A model generated the notes under the pieces. That model was not told where the DNA came from and did not search any database. It saw nothing but the letters and a program-made list of their open reading frames with translations. Both the position numbers and the translations under genes were made by a program. Below are positions 19,490 through 29,267 of a stretch of 64,000 nt of DNA, piece by piece. The stretch spans positions 362,997-426,996 of the forward strand of contig NW_005434654.1 of NCBI RefSeq assembly GCF_000315625.1. Direction: 5' to 3'. Positions within the stretch are counted from its first letter, which is position 1; the number at the start of each line of letters is the position of its first letter. The DNA comes from Guillardia theta CCMP2712. Its lineage: Eukaryota; Protista; Cryptophyta.

Positions 19490-20020
19490 GCCCCGAGTGA
19501 CAGCAGAGTCAGTCACTGAGTCAGGACGGTCGGTCCGATGGTCGGACAGCCGACTTGTGACCTGACCATGACTCATCATTCAGCTCATGGTGGTCACATG
19601 AGTTGCAGCTTCACGCCGTGATTGACGGCGGCCGGTCATCCGAGCCGGGGCGTGGGACTCAGGGCCCCGATGAGTCAGCCGGGGCGTCGGACAGTGACCC
19701 GCCGCATGCCGCAGCCCGGCGCTGAGCCTCACTGCGACGGTCTGCCCGGCCGGGCCCAGCGACTCAGTCTGAGTCAGACTCACAGAGTCAGTGAGAATTC
19801 CGGGCCCGGGGGTCCCGGACACGGGCCGTGCCAGGACGGCCAAGTTGGCCCCCCCCGGACTCAGTGAGGGCCGAGCGGCCCCGGGCCGCCGCCGATCACC
19901 GGGACGCCGACGCCGCGGCACGCCGGTGCCCGGCCGGCCCGGCCGCCTCTCGGTGACTGGCGGGCCTGAGACTCTCACCGTTCTCGGACGGCTGCACTGC
20001 CCGCATCCGAGTCAAGTTTT
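19490..20020. promoter_or_regulatory. GC-rich palindromic intergenic island between divergent LRR and channel genes
   Basis: Dense CCGG/GGCC/CCCGGG words plus repeated TGAGTC/GACTCA. Similar blocks occur at about 47990-48400, 55930-56040 and 63670-64000. Confidence 0.5.
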
Positions 20021-20055
20021 TGACAGGCGGGTCAAATCACTGGGACCCTCCTGCC

Positions 20056-21836
20056 ATGTCCGGGCAAGTGACATGGATGGAGAAGAGGAGGAGGAGGAGG
20101 AGAAGGAAGAAGGATAGAGGAGGGGAGAGCTTTAGGGTATCCACCCATGACGAGGACATGGTGGGAGATGATAGTTCCAGTGTGCGATCAGTTCAATCTC
20201 TGGCGGGGGTGGCTGGACCGGACGTGGTACCATCCCTACTAGCAGGGGGTGGCCATGGGCTGGACCTGTCAAGGTTCGACAAGGACCGTCTTCGTCTCTC
20301 TCGACATTTTGAAAGGGAGGCATCCAAGAGAGCATACGCTGTTTGGATCAGCGATTCCGAGCGGAGCACGTATGACAACAACCCGATGATTCTTACTCTC
20401 AGCGAGCCCGCGATCCATGGCGGAGAGAGCTTTCTAGTGCTCTTCCCACGGAAAAAGACAGATTTCCAGGAGATCCGCAGGACTGTTCTCGAGTTTGTCT
20501 TGCTGACGCCAGTCGTCAACGACAAGATGAAACTGAAAGATTTGGCGAATTTCTTCATTTCAGAATTCTGTGCTGAGATCCGGGGGGAACGCGACAAGAT
20601 CCGCTTGAAGGACATCAGCTCTGACGCGAGTAGGATCACGCTGATACTAGAAGAAGATGTTTGTCCCTCGCGAGATTTGTCACAGGTCATCATGAGGTTC
20701 AGAAATCAGATCGGGAGCCCCTTCTCTCAGCTCAACGACAAGATGTTGCTGAGTAAGATCATGGGTATCAACTTCCCCAAGGAGAAACTTTCCGCTGCGG
20801 CGAGAAGGAGGCAGAAGAATCAGCTCACAGGCGATAGAGCGCAGCAGGACATGTCTTCGAGGATGTTGAGATTGAGCTTGCGAGATGTCACGTATGTGCA
20901 CGACAGCGATGATCTGCATGTTGATGTTGCGACCGCAAGCAAGTTCGGGAACATTCTCGTGAAATTCCAGAGCGAGTCGGAAAAGCGTCAGTTCCTCGTC
21001 GCGTTTGAAGGAGCGTACGAGCCAAAGGACGAGTCGAAGCCTGCCGAAGATGTCCTGGAGGACCGCTCTGAGCTGGAACCGTCGCTCCTGCCAAGAAAGC
21101 TGCTGCTGGCCGAAGAGCTGGAGGATTACTTCAAGAGCAGTGCTTCTCAGGTAGACTTCACGACGCTGCAGCACTTGGAGCATGTCGGGAGGAGGCAGTG
21201 GGCGACGAAGTCTCGGACGATGTACAACAATCCACACGAGATCATATCCAAGACCCGTTTGCTCTCTACGAACGAGCTAGGCCTCGTGGGGAACTTTGAA
21301 ATCGAAGGGAAGGAGGAGGAGGAGGAGGAGCAAGACGATATCGAGCTGGGAGATTTGCATGCGTTGCCTGCGGAGTCGGAGCCGATTGTTGGAGAAGGAG
21401 CAGGACATGAAGGGAAGGGACAAGACGCGGGGGACGACGGGGAGACGCTGGAAGAGGAGGCGATGATGGAGGTACTTCAGGATGAGGAGGAAGGACGGAG
21501 GACCCTTGTTAGGAGGGAGGAAGACCTGAGGTCTCAGACTCTCAGATGGATGTCTGAACGAGCCATGCAGAAGGAGTGGTTGGAGATCCGACCGATCCCC
21601 TTGTCTCAGTACTGTGACTGGGGCTTCTGGTTCCTGGCAGCGGACAGGAACTTTCAAGATCTGGAGGAGAGGTCCCTGTTTCTCTTCAGCAAGCGGAACC
21701 CAGTCCGCCTCCTCTGTCTCCATCTCATCCGCTCTCGCTTCTGGCTCGCACTAGTGCCTGTGGTGGTCTTGGCCAACGTCGCCTTGCTCGCTGCTGGGGA
21801 TCCCCTCGACAACCCCGACCTGATCCCTGTGAGTTA

Positions 21837-21886
<50 letters not shown>

Positions 21887-24800
21887 TAGTCAGCCAGCCA
21901 GCCAGCCAGTCAGTCAGTCAGTCAGTCAGTCAGTCAGTCAGTCAGTCAGTCAGTCAGTCAGTCGTTATGATGTCAACTCATTCTCTTCTCTTCTCGCTCT
22001 TTTCTGACGAGCCCTGCGCTGCTCGCAGGTTTCTGCCACCCGGGCGAACATGGAGGTCGCGTCCTTTGTCTTCAACATCTTCTTCATCCTGGAAGCGAGC
22101 ATGAACATCATCGCCTACGGCTTCATTGTTGGGTCAACGTCCTACCTCCGCCAGTCCGAGAACGTCGTTGACTTTGGCATCGTCTTGACAAGCCTCGTCG
22201 ACATCCTAAGCGCCTCCTCCAGCAACCTTACCGCCCTCAGGAGCATCCGAGCTGTCCGCCCCCTCCGCATCCTCAGCAGGTCCCAGTCCCTCAAGGAGCT
22301 CCTCTCCATCCTCGTGCGCGCCGTTCCCGTCCTGCTCGCCGCCCTCTTCATCTGCCTCCTCTGCCTCTTCATAGGTGAGGCTGGGGAGACCCGACAGCTG
22401 GGCGGGTGCTGGGCCAAGGGCTGACAACTCTGTCCAGGGTCCATCATAGGAGTCCTCTTCTTCAAGGGGCTGCTCCGTTCGCGCTGCTACTCGACGTCTG
22501 ACGGGCGCCTGCTGGGCTCGCAGCAAGTGTGCTTCCTGCAGCTGGGGCAGAACAGCACAAACTTCCCCTTCATCGGCAACCCTTACTTCTGCCCCGAGGG
22601 TTTCCACTGCCTGCAGCTTTTTGCCAACCCGGGAAGCGGGTTTGACAACTTCGACAACGCGGGGTAGTCTTGACGTTGATGACGCTGCTCTTGCTCCCTC
22701 CCATGGCCCCTGTCCACCATCTCTCTACCTTCCAGCCTCCTTCCTGCCATTCCCTCTCCTTGCTCTAAGATCTGTTCTGTTCACACTCCTCCGCTTGTCT
22801 TCGAGTGACTTTCAGTTGCTTTGCAGGTATGCTTTCTCCGTCCTGGTTCAGGTGAACAACAGCCTCGTCCTCTCCCTCCTGCTTCTTGCTCCCCCCTCCC
22901 CCGTGCTCTCCTGCTCTCCTGCTCTCCTGCTCTCCTGCTCTCCTGCTCCCTTCCCCTCGTTACTCCTCCTCCTGACCCCCTTCACTCAGGTTTTCACCAT
23001 GTCGGGATGGTCCAACGTCATGTTTGACATTCAAGACGCAATCTCCCCCATGAGTTCCCTCTACTTCCTTGGCCACCTCGTCATCGGCCCCCTCCAAGTT
23101 CTCTCCTTCTGCCTCGCCTACATCAGCGCCAGGCTGGTCCAGCAGAGGAGGACGGAGTTCCTGCGCAGGGAGAAAGCCATCTACCGGCGATGGACCAACG
23201 CTTTCCTGCACGTCATGTTGGAGACTTTCCAGGTGCTTCCTCCCCCCGCCTCCTCCCTCTCCTTCAATCCTCTGCATGCCCTCCGCTCTTTGCATGCCTC
23301 CCTTTCCTTCTCCTCTCTACCTACTCGCAGCTTGTTCTTTTCCCTTCGCTGACCTGAACGCACTTGATCGACTTCTTTCTTGAGCAACGTTTCCATTCCA
23401 ATAACCTCCTCCTCCTCCTCCTCCTCCTCCTCTTCCCTCCCTCCCTCCCTCCCTCCCTCCCTCCCTCCTGACGATAGCTCCTATCAGGAGCGCTGCGAGC
23501 TGCGTAAGATTCTGCGGACAAACTTCCTCCTCTTCCGCTTGTTCAAGAGGACTTACCTGCATCGGATCGAAGACGCCATCAGCACATGGCACCAGGAGGC
23601 GTTCTTCCGCCGAGTCTTGCGAGGAGACCGAGGGCAGCAGTTTCTCTTCTACACCTCCTCCCGCTTCGAGAGGAAGTACCGCAGAAACCCCTGGCAGGCC
23701 TGGAAGTACGCCGTGCTCGTCATGCACAGGCGCGTGCAGAAGCTGCTGGAGGAGGAGATCGAGAAGTCGAGAGAGAAGGGAGGAGGACTCGTGCAGTTCG
23801 ACGTGATCGGGTAAGGAGTGAGGGAGCGAGGGAGGGGAGGGACGGGAGGGAGGGATGGGAGGGAGTGAGGGAGGGGAGGGAGGGAGCGAGGGAGGGGAGG
23901 CTCCATGCCTGTCTCTACCTAGGGATGTGAGGGGAGGGGAGGGAGGGGAGGGAGGGAGTGAGGGGAGCGAGCGAGGGAGGGAAGGGAGGGGATGGAGGGG
24001 AGGGGAGGGAGGGATCGCTCGGCTCGCTGACAGGATCATGGGCAGGAGGCCGATAGTGACGAGGAGGCTGAGGCAAGAGCTGAGGAAGAGAATCATCAAG
24101 TCCGACGAGGTGAAGGAGCGGCTGCAGGGCAGCGACATCAGCAACTACTACCTCGAGCAGCTGAAGCTGCGCATGTCGGAGAGGAAGCACTTTTTCAGGA
24201 AGAAGCTGCGGCAGGTAGGAGGGTGGCTTGACGAGAAGCTCCGAGCGCTGGCCTGCTCGTCTTTCCTGAACGGGCTAGTGATGTTGGTCGCTATCCTCAA
24301 CACGCTCGTCCTCTGCCTCGAGCACGAGTACGAGAGCAACCTGGGGGACTACTGGTCCTCGGAGAGCAAGTGGATGCGGTTCGAAGCAGGCATCTCCTTC
24401 ACCATGGTCGCCTTCTCCTCCGTCTTCTACCTGGAGGTTGCGATCAAGGCCGTCGGGCTGCGCAGCGAGTACGTCCTGCGCTACGACCCCGTCAAGAACG
24501 TCAAGGTAGTCGAGGTGCTGAACATCGTCGACATCCTCGTCACCGCCCTCTCCGCCCTCGAGTTCCTCCCGCTCATCAGGCAGGGAAGGTGCCTCCTCCG
24601 CGCCGCTCACTACATGGAGTGCCGCAAGGGCCAGGTCGGCCTCTCGTTCCTCCGCATCCTCCGCCTCCTCCGCATCCTCCGCCTCGCCCGGCTGATCCGC
24701 CACTTCCCGTCGCTGAAGCTGCAGCTGAGGAGCATCATCCTGGTGGGCAGGAAGGTGGGAGGGCTCATCGTCGTCCTATCAGTCTTTATCTTCATCTACT

Positions 24801-27800
24801 CCGTCCTCGGCATGACCCTCTTCGGCGGCATCCTCTCCCTCCCGCCCTCCCCCGACAGGCTCCAGGTGGGTGCACGATGCTACTGCAGAGTCCCCTCCAT
24901 GCCTATCCCAGCTGGCTCGTTGTTTGCGGGGCATCCGTGCACGATACGGGAGGTCGACCTGACGAGGAGGAGCTGCCAGTACGTGGTGGAGACAAGGATC
25001 AGCTCCTCCTCCCTTGGCAGAGCCAGCATGACGTACAGGGCCTGCTCGGTAGAGGATGCAGGTGGTGCGCGGGGGCAGGAGGTGGTGATCGTGGGGGTGA
25101 GTCCGAGGGCGAACTTTGACTCGTTCACCAACGCGCTAGTCAGCGTCTTCATCCTCTGGACGCTGTCCAACTGGGAGTCCACAATGCAGCTAGCTGCCTC
25201 CCAGCTCGGCTGGGGGGTTAACTTTTACTTCTACAGCCTCATCCTCTTCGGCAACCTCCTCATCGGAAACTTCCTCTTCGCAGGTGCTCGATGGTTCCCT
25301 CCCCTCACTCCTTACCACTTCTGCTCCCTGCGTTTCCCTCTCCTCTCCTCTCCTCTCCTCTCCTTCTCCTCCTCCTTCTGCACTCTCTTCCTTGTCCTGG
25401 CTCTCCTAATCTCTCCTTTCCCTTCCATCGCGCCATTCCTCTCCTTCTCTCATCTGAAACTTCTTCTCATCACCAGCCGTCATCGTCGAGTTCCGAGATC
25501 AGCGCAACACCGCGCAGCTGCTGAAGAAGAGAGCAGCGGCAAGGACAGCGCACACCACGTCGACCTCCGCGCAGCAGAGCAGGAGGCAGTCGCTCTCGGC
25601 TGAGGAGTCGAGGAAGCAGAGCGAGTTCAAGAGGCTCGAGGAGCAGGTGACGCAGGACGACAAAGTCCGCAGCCTGTCAGACGTCAGGAGCAGGATCGTG
25701 AGCAGCGGGAGGAGGGCATACAGCAAGGTCAACGACTCTGCGGCGGAGACGACATGCCTGTGTCTGGTGGAGCAGAGCTTCATCAGAAGGGGGAGCACCT
25801 TCGTCGTCTCCCACCGCTACTTCACCGCGCTGATGGTCATCGTGGTCGTCAGCAGCGTCTTCCTCCTCGTCTTCGGCATCCCGTCTGACTTCCGGCAGTT
25901 TGTTGCCGTCGCTTCCCTCAACTCTTTCTTCAACTGGGTGTTCATCGCGGAGTTCGCCATGAAGTGGATCGCTGGAGGCTGCATCCGCTACCTCCGCTCC
26001 CCCGCCAACTTCCTCGAGCTCCTTGTCGCGCTCGCCTCCATCGCCGACGAGTTCAGCTCCATCGCCCTTACCAGCGGCGTCTGGTCCGCCCTCTCTCCTA
26101 CCAAGGAGAGGTTCGCGGAACGAGACGAGAGGTGGACCAACCGAGTCTTTCCTGCCTTTCGCACCCTCCGCGTCTTCCGTATGCTCGACTTCTACCGCCT
26201 CCTGCCTCCCCGCTACAAGTCCCGCTCCCTCTCTACCTGCCTCGATGCTCTAGAGCTCTCGATCCCTCCTCTCCTCGTCTCCTCCGTCATCTCCTTCGTC
26301 ATCCTCGTCGTCTTCAGCCTGCTGGGCATGCAGCTCTTCTCCGGCAGGCTGTGGAGCTGCTCAGATCCGAGGGTGACGCTGAGGGAGGCGTGCGAGGGGA
26401 TGGGGACCACGACATGGCGGAGCAACAAGCTGAGCTTCGACTGGATCGGATCTGCTCTGCTCTCGTCTTTCTCCCTCCTCACCGGACGAGCTTGGGGTGA
26501 TGCGCCTGCTCGAAGCTTGTCGTGGCGATGGTGGAGATGATGGAGATGGAGATGGAGATGGAGATGGAGATGGAGATGATGGAGATGATGGAGATTATGG
26601 AGATTATGGAGATGATGATGTCATGATGATGATGATGACGACGACGATGATGATAATGATGATTCGCCGCTCCACCCTCCTGCTCTGACACTGACGCAGA
26701 CGAGCTCTTCTGGAAGGAGGCTGACGCAGGAGCTGATCCCTATCACGGGATGATTCAGAACGACAATCTTCCTGCTGCTGCTTCCTACTCCATCCTGACC
26801 TACTTCTTCGGCCTCATCTTCATCGTCAAGGTCTACACAGCAGGTGACTCCCCATGGTGTTCCGAGGACTCGATCAATTCTCCTCCTCTGCTCCTCCTCC
26901 TCTGCTCCTCCTCTGCTCCTCCTCTGCTCCTCTCTTCCTCTCCTACTCCTCTCCTCCTCCTTTTCCTCACGTTTTTCTTCTCGTCCTACACAAATCTCCT
27001 CCTTTCAACCTCTCCTCCTCCTCCTCCTCCTCTGCACATCTTCGTTCCTTCCTCTCTTGCTGACCTCTCCTTCAGTCCTCGTCGACACCTACGCCAGCGT
27101 CAACCTCTCGACCCCCTGGCCCATCCCCGCGAAGCCGAAACGCGCCGCCATCTCCGAGTGGGACGTGGGTGCGGAGCTCAAGGACCGGAGGAGGCAGTGG
27201 CTCTTCGACCAGCTGAGAAGGTTCGAGGTCGAAGTTCTGGTGACTTCCCTCGTGCTAGTCAACGTCGTCTTCATGTCTCTCGACAGCTACAAGTCAGCTG
27301 GGCAACAAGCTGGGGTCTCGCTCTCAGCTGACTTCTTCTTCGGCTTCACCTTCAGCGCCGAGGCGATCGCTCGGATCTTCGCGGGTCATCCGAAGCTCTA
27401 CATGAGAAGCCCCTGGAACCGCTTCGACTTCCTCCTTGTCCTCCTCTTCTTCCTCGGCGCTGCTATCAACTTCCAGCAGAGATTCGCCTCCTCCTTTGAC
27501 CTCACCTTCACCCGCAACCTCCGCCTCATCCGCGTTGCCCGCTTCCTCCGCCTCCTCAAGAGCTTTCGCCTCGTTCGCCTCCTTCAGTGGATGGTTGCAG
27601 TGGTGAACGTCATGAGGAGAACCATCCCAATCGTCGCCTCCCTTGCCTTCATTTTCTTCGTCTTCCTCTTCGTCTCCTCCGTCGTCGGCAACAAGCTCTA
27701 CGGCCACCTCTGCATCCAGGGCGACGATACGCTGCGCTGCCAGCTGATGGATCAGAGTCTCCTCCTGCCCCGCCACCAGAACTTCAAGTACTTGGTGAGA

Positions 27801-27834
<34 letters not shown>

Positions 27835-29267
27835 CCTGCTCCTCCTCCTGCTCCTCCTCCTCCTCGTGCTAGCCGAACCTCCCGTTCTTTCACCTCATCC
27901 AATTCTTCTTCTCCTCCCTCTCTCAATCTTCGCATCAACCTCGAGCAATTCTCAGGACCTCATCCTGCTGCTCCACCTTGCTCCCTCCTTGCTCCCTCTT
28001 CTCCTCTCTTATCTCTGCGCAGAGCACCGGCATGACCATGCTGGCGGTCATGGCGACGCTGGACGGTTGGGTGGAGAAGATGAATCTCTTCGACCTCAAG
28101 GCCGGCAAGCGGCTACCCGGCGCCTTCCTCAACGCTACTCTCCTCCTCTCCCAGCTGCCGCTCCAGCAGGAAAAGAACAGCGTCCTCGGACAGATCAGGC
28201 AGCTGCTCCCTGTCTGCCTTCTCCAGGAGGAGGCCAGGAGCCTCGAGGCCAGCGGCCTGATCACCTGCTACGACGACGCCTCCCATCGCATCCCCTGCCA
28301 GGGCACCTGCTCGCAGCTCGGCTCTGCCGCTTCCCTCTTCGTCGTCTTCATCGTCGTCTCCAACTTCGTCATCCTCCAGCTCCTCATCGCGTTCCTCATG
28401 GACCTGCTCCGAGGCCCCGTCGGCAGCACCAACTACGACAGCAGGAGGATACGGGTGGGAAGCAGCGTCCTGCTGACCCGGGACCTCAAGAAGGCCCTGA
28501 GAAGGTGGCACTGGAAGTCCAGGATGTCCCGCATGTACGCGCATGCTACCGAGAGGCCCCGGTTCCTGGCCCACCAGCAACTCCTCGCTGCGCAGGAGGA
28601 GAGGAACCGCCTCGACCGCCGCCTGAAGGAGAGGAAGAGAAGGGAGGGGTGGAGGGACAGCAGGAGCATGCGGGTCCCCTCCCATCTCCGCACTCCTACC
28701 ACCCCTGCTAGGACCTCAGCTCTAGGTTCGGGGCGGGACCAGGAGCTGGCCCAGCAGGACTATGACACCGTCCTTGTCATTCCCAGCTGGGACGACCCGG
28801 TGTCAAACCAGGGGAATGACTGGGAGGTCAGGAGCGTCAGCTCCCGCCCCTCCTCCGTTCGCATCGGGGAGAACTTCCTGTTGCCCTCCTCGTTGACCAG
28901 CAGCCTCTGCTTCCTTGACAGGCAGCCTACTGCGGGAAGGAGGTACCAGCAGGAGCAGGACGGGGAGGAGGATGGGGGCCCGGAGGTGGAGAAGGAGGAG
29001 GGAGGAGGAGGGGAAGTGGAGGGAGGACAGGAGAGGCAGGAAGCCCATCGATGGAAGGTGATCGTGCATGAGGTGACGGAGGAGGAGGAGGGGGAAGGTG
29101 GGGAGGAGGAGGAGAAGGAGGGTAGAGGAGGGATGCGGAGCAGAGAGCTGCACCCTCCTCTCCTCATCAACGCCCTCGACTCGGGAAGTGACCTGACGAC
29201 GTTAAGGACGGGGCCCTCTGAGGGCGAGCTCCTACAGCAGGACTTGAATCTTCCGTTCTTCCTATGA
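20056..29267 (+). CDS. Four-domain (24-TM) voltage-gated cation channel alpha subunit, Cav/Nav/NALCN superfamily (multi-exon)
   Basis: Four S4 segments (LRSIRAVRPLRILSR; LRILRLLRILRLARLIR; FRTLRVFRMLDFYR; RNLRLIRVARFLRLLK), S3 motifs (ENVVDF, LNIVDI, ANFLEL, WNRFDF) and four pore loops (FDNF..TMSGW; NFDSF..TLSNW; SFDWI..TGRAW; HQNF..TLDGW). Confidence 0.92.
21836..21963 (+). repeat. Compound tetranucleotide microsatellite (CAGC)n-(CAGT)n in channel intron 1
   Basis: Directly visible tandem repeats. Confidence 0.95.
26527..26662 (+). repeat. (GATGGA)n/(GAT)n microsatellite in a channel intron
   Basis: Directly visible tandem repeats. Confidence 0.9.

What the first reader, a model, noticed from the sequence alone, without database searches (positions are those of the whole stretch)
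22990..28070. Four-domain voltage-gated channel with a non-canonical S-S-R-D selectivity filter
Seen: aligning on the T-x-[E/D]-x-W pore motif gives DI TM-S-GW (TCG 23002-23004), DII TL-S-NW (TCC 25166-25168), DIII TG-R-AW (CGA 26487-26489) and DIV TL-D-GW (GAC 28062-28064). Known: Cav is EEEE/EEDD, Nav is DEKA and NALCN is EEKE/EKEE. This ring has a net charge of about zero, with two serines and an arginine. The S4s of DI, DII and DIV are Arg-rich, whereas DIII S4 is weakened (FRTLRVFRMLDFYR has an Asp in a charge position). Inference: a channel class with altered (monovalent, non-selective or even anion-tolerant) permeation, or a non-conducting voltage sensor.
Basis: partly seen in the sequence, partly recalled or inferred. 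Interest (0 to 1): 0.8.

Follow-up and report, generated by a model that had tools for sequence, protein, structure and literature searches.

The report
Algal four-domain channel with S/S/R/D pore
This is an intact but almost silent gene for a voltage-gated four-domain cation channel related to T-type calcium channels, whose four pore-lining residues are Ser/Ser/Arg/Asp instead of the usual acidic ring, so it probably passes monovalent cations rather than calcium.

Summary
An 11-exon gene on the + strand (20020-29267, about 2,449 codons, all introns GT..AG) encodes a four-domain voltage-gated cation channel. They align with the E/E/D/D positions of solved human Cav3 channels.

RNA-seq could not confirm the splice joins, because only 2 reads were laid. 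All ten joins are instead colinear with nearly intron-free relatives from metagenomes.

The gene is sister (100% SH-aLRT) to a small marine-metagenome clade with S/T/D/D filters. Both sit in a protist clade allied to Cav3-type E/E/D/D channels. Loss of the DI and DII glutamates is therefore a subfamily trait, and only the DIII Asp-to-Arg change is specific to this gene. A 97%-identical metagenome contig keeps TGRAW, with dN/dS 0.21.

By analogy with the Nav1.4 DERA mutant, I predict a voltage-gated monovalent channel that excludes Ca2+ and does not discriminate Na+ from K+. An anion channel or a pseudogene is unlikely.

Arginine-bearing and S/S/K/E filters in protists were already catalogued (Pozdnyakov 2018), without functional tests. 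I rate this a new variant of a known kind, of moderate interest. The scan noted another odd-filter (D/D/K/D) channel elsewhere in this genome.

The parts
20020..21828 (+). Exon 1. Long N-terminal cytoplasmic region (about 560 aa, no Pfam domain) plus DI S1 (21739-21798). The likely start is Met at 20056. The 5' end is not verified.
   Evidence: ORF and GTGAGT donor. Pfam found nothing at E<=0.01. L012 alignment starts at residue 548.
22029..22374 (+). Exon 2. DI S2 to S5, including DI S4 LTALRSIRAVRPLRILSR (22227-22280).
   Evidence: Pfam Ion_trans E=2.5e-22. Join colinear with L012.
22438..22663 (+). Exon 3. End of DI S5 and the extracellular turret.
   Evidence: Frames and splice sites. Colinear with L012.
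22827..22851 (+). Exon 4. A 25-nt micro-exon encoding (G)YAFSVLVQ, the DI pore helix. It is needed to restore the reading frame between exons 3 and 5.
   Evidence: CAG|...|GTGAAC sites, phase 2 to phase 0. Aligns without a gap to SSMLSLLQ of L012.
22990..23232 (+). Exon 5. DI selectivity-filter loop VFTMSGWSNV (Ser codon TCG 23002-23004) and DI S6.
   Evidence: Ser aligned with the DI Glu of Cav3.2. Relatives L004 and L012 have TLSGW.
23488..23810 (+). Exon 6. DI-DII cytoplasmic linker.
   Evidence: Colinear with L012 and L004.
24034..25283 (+). Exon 7. The whole of DII: S4 LSFLRILRLLRILRLARLIRH (24641-24703), a turret insert of about 90 aa with conserved Cys residues (24833-25108), the filter WTLSNWES (Ser TCC 25166-25168) and S6.
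   Evidence: Pfam Ion_trans E=1.1e-30. PDB alignment to Cav3.2 and Cav1.2 DII. Turret insert shared with L002, L004, L012, P0004 and P0006.
25477..26496 (+). Exon 8. DII-DIII linker and DIII S1 up to the filter. Holds S4 FPAFRTLRVFRMLDFYR (26148-26198, Asp at the fourth charge position) and filter LLTGRAW (Arg CGA 26487-26489).
   Evidence: Pfam E=1.8e-26. PDB alignment to Cav3.1 DIII puts Arg opposite Asp. A 97%-identical metagenome contig, L001/P0001, keeps TGRAW and has Glu in S4.
26700..26843 (+). Exon 9. DIII outer vestibule (D-E-LFWKEAD) and most of DIII S6. A Lys replaces the conserved S6 Asn.
   Evidence: Colinear with L002 and L012.
27076..27794 (+). Exon 10. End of DIII S6, the short III-IV linker, and DIV S1 to S5 with S4 LTFTRNLRLIRVARFLRLLKSFRLVRLL (27501-27584).
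   Evidence: Pfam Ion_trans E=1.3e-22..
28023..29267 (+). Exon 11. DIV filter loop MATLDGWVEK (Asp GAC 28062-28064), a long post-filter loop, DIV S6 (28329-28409), the C-terminal tail and the stop codon.
   Evidence: L004 has STLDGWVRK across the same join without an intron.

Best explanation
The gene encodes a functional, very weakly expressed four-domain voltage-gated cation channel. It belongs to a protist lineage allied to T-type (Cav3, E/E/D/D) channels. In its subfamily the DI and DII filter glutamates had already been replaced by Ser and Ser/Thr (S/T/D/D). On the branch to this gene the DIII Asp became Arg. The inner ring now holds one carboxylate (DIV Asp) next to a guanidinium. An outer set of acidic residues remains: DII Glu at +3, DIII Asp/Glu at +3/+4, DIV Glu at +4. 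Inferred mechanism: four S4 sensors, three strongly charged and DIII weakened, open the pore on depolarisation. The outer acidic residues attract cations. The DIII Arg excludes Ca2+ electrostatically, as Lys or Arg does at the same position of Nav channels. The channel would then carry Na+ and K+ with little discrimination, acting as a depolarising monovalent conductance rather than a Ca2+ entry path. Shown: gene structure, residues, phylogenetic position, Asp as the ancestral DIII state, purifying selection. Inferred: conductance and selectivity.
For: Intact reading frame of 2,449 codons over 11 exons, all GT..AG. All ten joins are colinear with intron-poor relatives. Four Ion_trans repeats. 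The best solved relatives are human Cav3.1, Cav3.2 and Cav3.3, with S/S/R aligned to E/E/D. Trees: FastTree puts the gene with P0002 inside an 8-row protist clade, which joins the Cav3-type clade (all 100% support). IQ-TREE (LG+C20) makes it sister (100) to four S/T/D/D metagenome lineages, with ?/T/D/D, ?/A/D/D and E/E/D/D outgroups, so DIII Asp is ancestral. The Arg codon CGA is at least 2 substitutions from GAY, and the identical codon occurs in a separately assembled metagenome contig. Purifying selection on exon 8: 19 synonymous against 13 non-synonymous changes, dN/dS 0.21, binomial p=2.4e-5. Nav1.4 K1237R (DERA) still conducts, has PK/PNa 0.9 and carries no inward Ca2+ current. According to PMC2391246 (citing Favre 1996), a positive residue in the ring, Lys or Arg, prevents divalent permeation completely; PMC2233758 confirms this for DERA.
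Against: There is no functional or structural test. Only 2 RNA-seq reads were laid, from about 6% of a 12.8-Gb run, and nothing genuine was found in three transcriptome assemblies. Expression is therefore nearly undetectable and no splice join is shown by RNA. The DERA analogy comes from a pore with two inner carboxylates, whereas this one has a single carboxylate. An Arg-Asp salt bridge between neighbouring DIII and DIV could narrow or block the pore. Selection was measured on one exon only, against one contig whose mismatch pattern is odd.
Confidence: 0.55

Rival explanations
1. It is a non-conducting or barely conducting voltage sensor. The DIII Arg pairs with the neighbouring DIV Asp and, with two small serines, leaves no cation-binding site. 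The protein would signal through conformational coupling, or through gating-pore (omega) currents, rather than through the central pore.
For: Only one inner-ring carboxylate remains and it is adjacent to Arg. The DIII S4 carries an acidic residue at the fourth charge position (D here, E in P0001). The conserved DIII S6 Asn is replaced by Lys. Expression is very low.
Against: The pore helices, the T-x-x-x-W motifs, the S6 segments and the outer acidic residues are conserved relative to kin. The DERA Nav mutant with Arg at this position still conducts nanoampere currents (PMC2233758). The S6 Lys/Arg is shared with S/T/D/D relatives, so it is not tied to the Arg filter.
Confidence: 0.2
2. It is a decaying or recently silenced paralogue. 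The odd filter would then reflect relaxed constraint in one member of a large channel family.
For: Near-absence of RNA reads. The branch is long, 1.08 substitutions per site. Several charge changes occur at functional positions. No annotated protein with this exon sequence was found in the protein collections.
Against: No stop or frameshift in 7,350 coding bases across 11 exons with canonical splice sites. dN/dS is 0.21 with p=2.4e-5 against neutrality on exon 8, and TGRAW is retained in the diverged copy.
Confidence: 0.1
3. It is a Ca2+-permeable or otherwise divalent-permeable channel in spite of the Arg. Selectivity would be set by the outer acidic residues and the DIV Asp.
For: Acidic residues at DII +3, DIII +3/+4 and DIV +4. 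The ancestry is Cav3-like.
Against: In Nav channels any positive residue in the inner ring abolishes divalent permeation (PMC2391246, PMC2233758). The EE half of the ring, which is needed for high-affinity Ca2+ binding in Cav channels, is missing.
Confidence: 0.1
4. It is an anion-tolerant or anion-selective pore, because the inner ring has no net charge.
For: Inner-ring net charge is 0, with Arg present.
Against: There are four acidic residues just outside the ring, against a single Lys. No member of this superfamily is known to conduct anions (my own knowledge).
Confidence: 0.03

Closest known systems
Metazoan T-type calcium channels (Cav3.1-3.3; E/E/D/D filter)
   Same: They are the best-scoring solved structures for the DI, DII and DIII pieces. 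The protist clade holding this gene and the Cav3-type clade fall on one side of a strongly supported split. Both have four charged S4 segments, and both have Asp in DIV.
   Different: The filter is S/S/R/D, not E/E/D/D. This gene has a DII turret insert of about 90 aa with conserved cysteines, a long N-terminus without known domains, Lys in place of the DIII S6 Asn, and only about 30% identity.
Uncharacterised S/T/D/D channels from marine and freshwater metagenomes (loci L002-L004, L008-L012; P0002 cluster)
   Same: They are the sister clade (100% support). Shared features: DI TLSGW, the DII turret with the CYC..VP...GHPC motif, DIV TLDGW, Lys/Arg in DIII S6, and conserved C-terminal RRW and AHQ..LAAQ motifs.
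   Different: They have Asp, not Arg, in DIII, and Thr-Asp, not Ser-Asn, in DII. The fourth DIII S4 charge is Lys or Asn, not Asp. DIV reads WVRK, not WVEK. They have few or no introns. Identity is about 33-37%.
Guillardia theta XP_005829415.1 ('Guillt8' of Pozdnyakov et al. 2018; P0079)
   Same: It is the nearest named relative and lies in the same protist subclade. It has also lost the DII Glu (ILTQTNW) and keeps D/D in DIII and DIV.
   Different: About 30% identity, and Asp in DIII. Its RefSeq model appears to lack the DI pore helix, so its DI residue is uncertain.
Voltage-gated sodium channels (D/E/K/A) and the Nav1.4 K1237R 'DERA' mutant
   Same: A basic residue at the DIII filter position, with acidic residues 3-4 positions further out. 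DERA is the only tested pore with Arg at this position: it is non-selective between Na+ and K+ and impermeable to Ca2+ (PMC2391246, PMC2233758).
   Different: This gene is not in the Nav clade (the DEKA representative P0086 lies elsewhere). It has Arg rather than Lys and Ser rather than Asp/Glu in DI and DII. No IFM-like motif was seen in the III-IV linker.
Protist four-domain channels with basic residues in the filter, catalogued by Pozdnyakov et al. 2018 (Phytophthora S/S/K/E; Arg/His filters in Micromonas, Ostreococcus, Guillardia, Thecamonas)
   Same: Same kind of observation. S/S/K/E is nearly the same pattern (Ser, Ser, basic, acidic). The paper notes that selectivity cannot be predicted for Arg filters (PMC5824947).
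   Different: None of the ten Guillardia S4 sets in that paper's Table S2 matches this gene, and S/S/R/D is not mentioned in its text. In my sample, other Arg filters carry the Arg in DI (R/S/D/D: P0048, P0069) and lie in other clades.

Membership tests
[quoted passage not shown] | Four homologous 6-TM repeats (Pfam Ion_trans) in one polypeptide | tested here: met
   Ion_trans hits on the DI, DII, DIII and DIV exons. A single spliced reading frame of 2,449 aa. Colinear with four-domain relatives.
[quoted passage not shown] | S4 segments with three or more basic residues at every third position | tested here: met
   DI 4, DII 6, DIII 4 (R-R-R-D-R), DIV 8.
[quoted passage not shown] | A re-entrant P-loop with pore helix and T-x-x-x-W motif between S5 and S6 in each repeat | tested here: met
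   TMSGW, TLSNW, TGRAW, TLDGW, aligned to the filter columns of 95 relatives and of Cav3 structures.
Cav3 / T-type calcium channels | E/E/D/D selectivity filter | tested here: not met
   S/S/R/D. Only the DIV Asp is retained.
Cav3 / T-type calcium channels | Phylogenetic grouping with Cav3 to the exclusion of HVA Cav, Nav and NALCN | tested here: inconclusive
   The protist clade plus the Cav3-type clade form one side of a split with 100% (FastTree) and 99% (IQ-TREE quick) support. The trees are unrooted, branches are long, and the Cav3-type rows are unnamed and were recognised only by their pore motifs.
Cav3 / T-type calcium channels | Helix-loop-helix 'gating brake' in the I-II linker | not tested
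   The linker (exon 6) was not compared.
Nav channels | D/E/K/A (or D/E/E/A) filter with Lys in DIII | tested here: not met
   Arg in DIII, Ser in DI and DII, Asp in DIV. The gene does not group with the DEKA representative P0086.
Nav channels | Hydrophobic IFM-type inactivation motif in the III-IV linker | tested here: not met
   The linker reads ...NLSTPWPIPAKPKRAAISEWDVGAELKDRRRQW... with no hydrophobic triplet followed by Thr/Ser (by inspection only).
NALCN / fungal Cch1 leak channels | E/E/K/E-type filter together with S4 segments poor in Arg/Lys | tested here: not met
   The filter is S/S/R/D and all S4 segments are rich in charge.

The most novel reading that the evidence does not exclude
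This would be an independent, convergent origin of a Nav-like pore design inside a Cav3-related protist lineage. The design is a basic residue at the DIII filter position, an outer acidic ring and loss of the Ca2+-binding glutamates. It would give a cryptophyte a Ca2+-excluding, voltage-gated monovalent cation conductance built with Arg instead of Lys. It would also be a natural counterpart of the laboratory DERA mutant.
Probability: 0.3. Interest if true: 0.65.

Novelty: new variant of a known kind. Interest (0 to 1): 0.5.

Why it matters
How sodium or monovalent selectivity arose from calcium-type four-domain channels is known mainly from animals (DEKA, DEEA, EEKE). Protist channels with basic filter residues have been listed but never recorded. 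This gene is a clean natural experiment. Its sister clade keeps S/T/D/D, so the electrophysiological effect of a single natural Asp-to-Arg change at the DIII position can be tested by swapping one residue in either background. If it conducts, it would show what an Arg-containing filter with one carboxylate does in a native pore. It would also add a non-Ca2+ voltage-gated conductance to cryptophyte excitability. If it does not conduct, it would be a natural example of a four-domain channel turned into a pure voltage sensor.

Tried and rejected
1. RNA-seq confirmation of splice joins: one raw RNA run and three transcriptome assemblies were laid on 22400-28399. Only 2 reads were laid and no joints were seen. 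The contig matches were low-complexity intron repeats. This is inconclusive.

2. Word-index protein searches: the DIII exon found only the near-identical fragment P0001. The DII exon and the last exon found nothing, because the candidate lists were swamped.

3. The tools do not accept a spliced protein, so I ran no full-length database search and built no AlphaFold pore model. Single-domain folds were judged uninformative for a four-residue ring and were not run.

4. The first search for related loci attempt failed because the alignment held partial rows. It worked after trimming to three rows.

5. The DIV exon against solved structures gave no channel hit, since the piece is short and has a long insert.

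6. Looked for this gene among the ten Guillardia channels of Pozdnyakov 2018 by their S4 strings: no match. The per-sequence filter motifs are in that paper's Figure 3, which is not held, so I could not check whether S/S/R/D appears there.

7. The first literature query for K1237R returned irrelevant papers.

8. Rejected: alternative pore exons. Introns are 63-255 nt of low-complexity sequence, and relatives are colinear across every join.

9. Rejected: a sequencing error at the Arg codon. It is at least 2 substitutions from Asp, and the codon is identical in a separately assembled metagenome contig.
Full report
**Gene structure**

The + strand between 20020 and 29267 holds a run of open frames that each hit Pfam Ion_trans: DI E=2.5e-22, DII 1.1e-30, DIII 1.8e-26, DIV 1.3e-22. 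Reading the sequence and checking frames by script gives 11 exons. They are 20020-21828, 22029-22374, 22438-22663, 22827-22851, 22990-23232, 23488-23810, 24034-25283, 25477-26496, 26700-26843, 27076-27794 and 28023-29267.

Every intron is GT..AG with a CAG acceptor and is 63-255 nt long. The spliced frame is open for 2,449 codons. The 25-nt micro-exon (22827-22851) is needed to keep the frame, and it encodes the DI pore helix.

**RNA evidence**

No listed run that holds this stretch is recorded as RNA. I laid one raw RNA-seq run of the same species label and three transcriptome assemblies on 22400-28399. This gave 2 reads from about 20 million records and no joints. The assembly matches were only to low-complexity intron repeats. 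The gene is therefore almost silent in the data available, and RNA could not confirm the joins.

Homology supports the joins instead. tblastn of the model against nearly intron-free relatives from metagenomes (L012, L004, L002) is colinear across all ten junctions, including both sides of the micro-exon.

**Observation check**

| Domain | Codon and coordinates | Motif |
|---|---|---|
| DI | TCG 23002-4 | TMSGW |
| DII | TCC 25166-8 | TLSNW |
| DIII | CGA 26487-9 | TGRAW |
| DIV | GAC 28062-4 | TLDGW |

- phmmer against solved structures ranks human Cav3.1 and Cav3.2 first for the DI, DII and DIII pieces.
- It aligns Ser(DI) with the Glu of VITLEGW and Ser(DII) with the Glu of ILTQEDW / ILTGEDW.
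- It aligns Arg(DIII) with the Asp of LASKDGW.
- The DIV exon alone gave no channel hit.
- A MAFFT alignment with 95 full-length representatives puts all four residues in the filter columns. In that sample EEEE occurs 32 times and EEDD 11 times, and S/S/R/D occurs only here.

The S4 segments are as described. Basic residues in 3-residue register number 4 in DI, 6 in DII and 8 in DIV. DIII reads R-R-R-D-R.

**Relatives**

A full HMMER scan of 1.84 billion representatives with DIII found only 872 hits at E<=1e-3.

- The best hit is a 97%-identical fragment, P0001.
- The next is at 35% identity, P0002.
- The rest are at about 30%.

So the lineage is isolated. No protein containing the window's DIII exon is in the collections. 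None of the ten Guillardia theta channels in Pozdnyakov et al. 2018 has its S4 strings.

The nearest named relative is G. theta XP_005829415.1 (P0079). An earlier scan note on another piece of this genome describes a D/D/K/D channel with a degenerate DII sensor. That matches what the paper reports for Guillardia. The genome is therefore probably G. theta, although I could not verify this directly.

**Phylogeny and polarity**

FastTree on 97 rows joins the gene with P0002 (96). That pair sits inside an 8-row protist clade (100). This clade shares one side of a 100% split with an 11-row clade whose pore motifs are those of human Cav3.

Contigs encoding P0002-like proteins (L002-L004) and a metagenome scan (L008-L012) gave four distinct lineages.

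- All four have DII TLTDW, DIII TGDGW and DIV TLD[G/A]W.
- The two that include DI (L004, L012) have TLSGW.
- The subfamily filter is therefore S/T/D/D.

An IQ-TREE LG+C20 tree makes the window gene sister (100) to that clade (100). The outgroups are P0079 (?/T/D/D), P0138 (?/A/D/D) and P0034, followed by the E/E/D/D proteins P0004, P0006 and P0087.

By parsimony, loss of the DI and DII glutamates predates this gene. Asp in DIII is ancestral, and Arg arose on the branch to this gene. The following are also derived here:

- Glu at DII +3 (relatives have S, Q or N).
- An acidic residue at the fourth DIII S4 position (K in three relatives, N in one).

Polarity is ambiguous for DII n+1 (N here and in P0079 and P0138; D in the sister clade). 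It is also ambiguous for DIV +4 (E here, D in P0079 and P0138, R in the sister clade).

**Selection**

The metagenome contig L001 (1,212 nt) matches 25389-26600 without gaps and with 32 mismatches.

- Within exon 8 there are 19 synonymous and 13 non-synonymous changes: dN/dS 0.21, binomial p=2.4e-5 against neutrality.
- TGRAW is unchanged.
- The S4 Asp becomes Glu, so the acidic character is kept.
- The Arg codon is at least two substitutions from any Asp codon and is identical in this separately assembled contig, so it is not a sequencing error.
- One oddity remains. All mismatches lie in the central 850 nt, and the 362 flanking bases are identical (p about 1e-6). This suggests a chimeric assembly or a recombinant allele.

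**Mechanism (inferred)**

Intact sensors argue for voltage gating. The inner ring has a single carboxylate (DIV), next in the pseudo-tetramer to the DIII guanidinium. Acidic residues sit further out: WES in DII, WDE in DIII and WVE in DIV.

The only experimental precedent for Arg at this position is Nav1.4 K1237R (DERA).

- It conducts nanoampere currents.
- It has PK/PNa of 0.9.
- It carries no inward Ca2+ current.
- According to PMC2391246 (citing Favre 1996), Lys or Arg in the ring prevents divalent permeation completely; PMC2233758 confirms it for DERA.

I therefore predict a Ca2+-excluding monovalent conductance with poor Na+/K+ discrimination (confidence 0.55). The main rival is a non-conducting sensor with an Arg-Asp salt bridge (0.2). 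Decay (0.1), divalent permeability (0.1) and anion permeation (0.03) are less likely, for the reasons given with each rival.

**Novelty**

Pozdnyakov et al. 2018 already listed rare protist filters with basic residues. They report Arg/His filters in Micromonas, Ostreococcus, Guillardia and Thecamonas, and S/S/K/E in a Phytophthora. They stated that the selectivity of Arg filters cannot be predicted.

In my sample, R/S/D/D filters (P0048, P0069) and a possible ?/G/R/E filter (P0059) occur in other clades. This gene is thus a new variant of a known kind. It has a previously uncatalogued S/S/R/D member with a clear polarity (Asp to Arg on a Cav3-like S/T/D/D background), and reciprocal mutagenesis makes it directly testable.

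**Limits**

- Expression is unconfirmed.
- The 5' end of the gene is unverified.

Noticed in passing
L001 against window 25389-26600: All 32 mismatches between the metagenome contig and the window lie within 25557-26406. The 168 + 194 flanking bases, including both intron parts, are identical (p about 1e-6 for a uniform rate). This suggests a chimeric metagenome assembly of two strains, or a recombinant or converted allele.
   Followed up: partly
L002 1-1430; P0034 and P0160 N-termini: Some relatives seem to start at DII. L002 has a PPR-repeat ORF in the same orientation directly upstream of DII S1. P0034 and P0160 (about 1,820-1,850 aa) have their first P-loop, a degenerate one without Trp, at residues 250-300. 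These may be three-domain derivatives, or assembly or annotation artefacts.
   Followed up: no
window 26786-27092 (DIII S6); L002, L004, L012: The Asn that is conserved in S6 of Cav and Nav channels is replaced in DIII by Lys in the window gene (IFIVKVYTAV) and by Arg or Lys in the S/T/D/D relatives (FVTRLIL, FVTKLLL). DI S6 also lacks it.
   Followed up: no
window 24833-25108: The DII S5-P turret carries an insert of about 90 aa with conserved cysteines (..CYCRVP....GHPC..) followed by (I/V)VGV.PR.NF. The insert is shared with the S/T/D/D relatives and, in a longer form, with the E/E/D/D proteins P0004 and P0006. It marks this protist clade.
   Followed up: partly
window 21836-21965 and 26530-26680: Intron 1 is almost entirely (CCAG)n / (TCAG)n microsatellite. 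Intron 8 holds (GGAGAT)n and (ATG/ATGATG)n arrays. Other introns are CT-rich low-complexity sequence that matches many unrelated transcriptome contigs.
   Followed up: no
P0079 (G. theta XP_005829415.1) residues 270-303: The RefSeq model runs from DI S5 (FIFAIVGVQVF) straight into GWVSIM, skipping the turret and pore helix. An exon such as the 25-nt micro-exon found here was probably missed, so the DI filter residue published for it may be unreliable.
   Followed up: no
window 20020-21700: The N-terminal region of about 560 aa before DI S1 has no Pfam match at E<=0.01. It contains a poly-Arg/Lys stretch and acidic runs. Its true start (Met at 20056, or upstream exons) was not established.
   Followed up: no
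window 28480-28600; L002, L003, L012 C-termini: Proximal C-terminal motifs are conserved between the window gene and its relatives (LKKALRRWHWK / LKLSARRWK.K, and ..FLAHQQLLAAQ / LV.HQRYLAAQ). No canonical IQ motif or EF-hand was recognised. This may be a lineage-specific regulatory helix.
   Followed up: no
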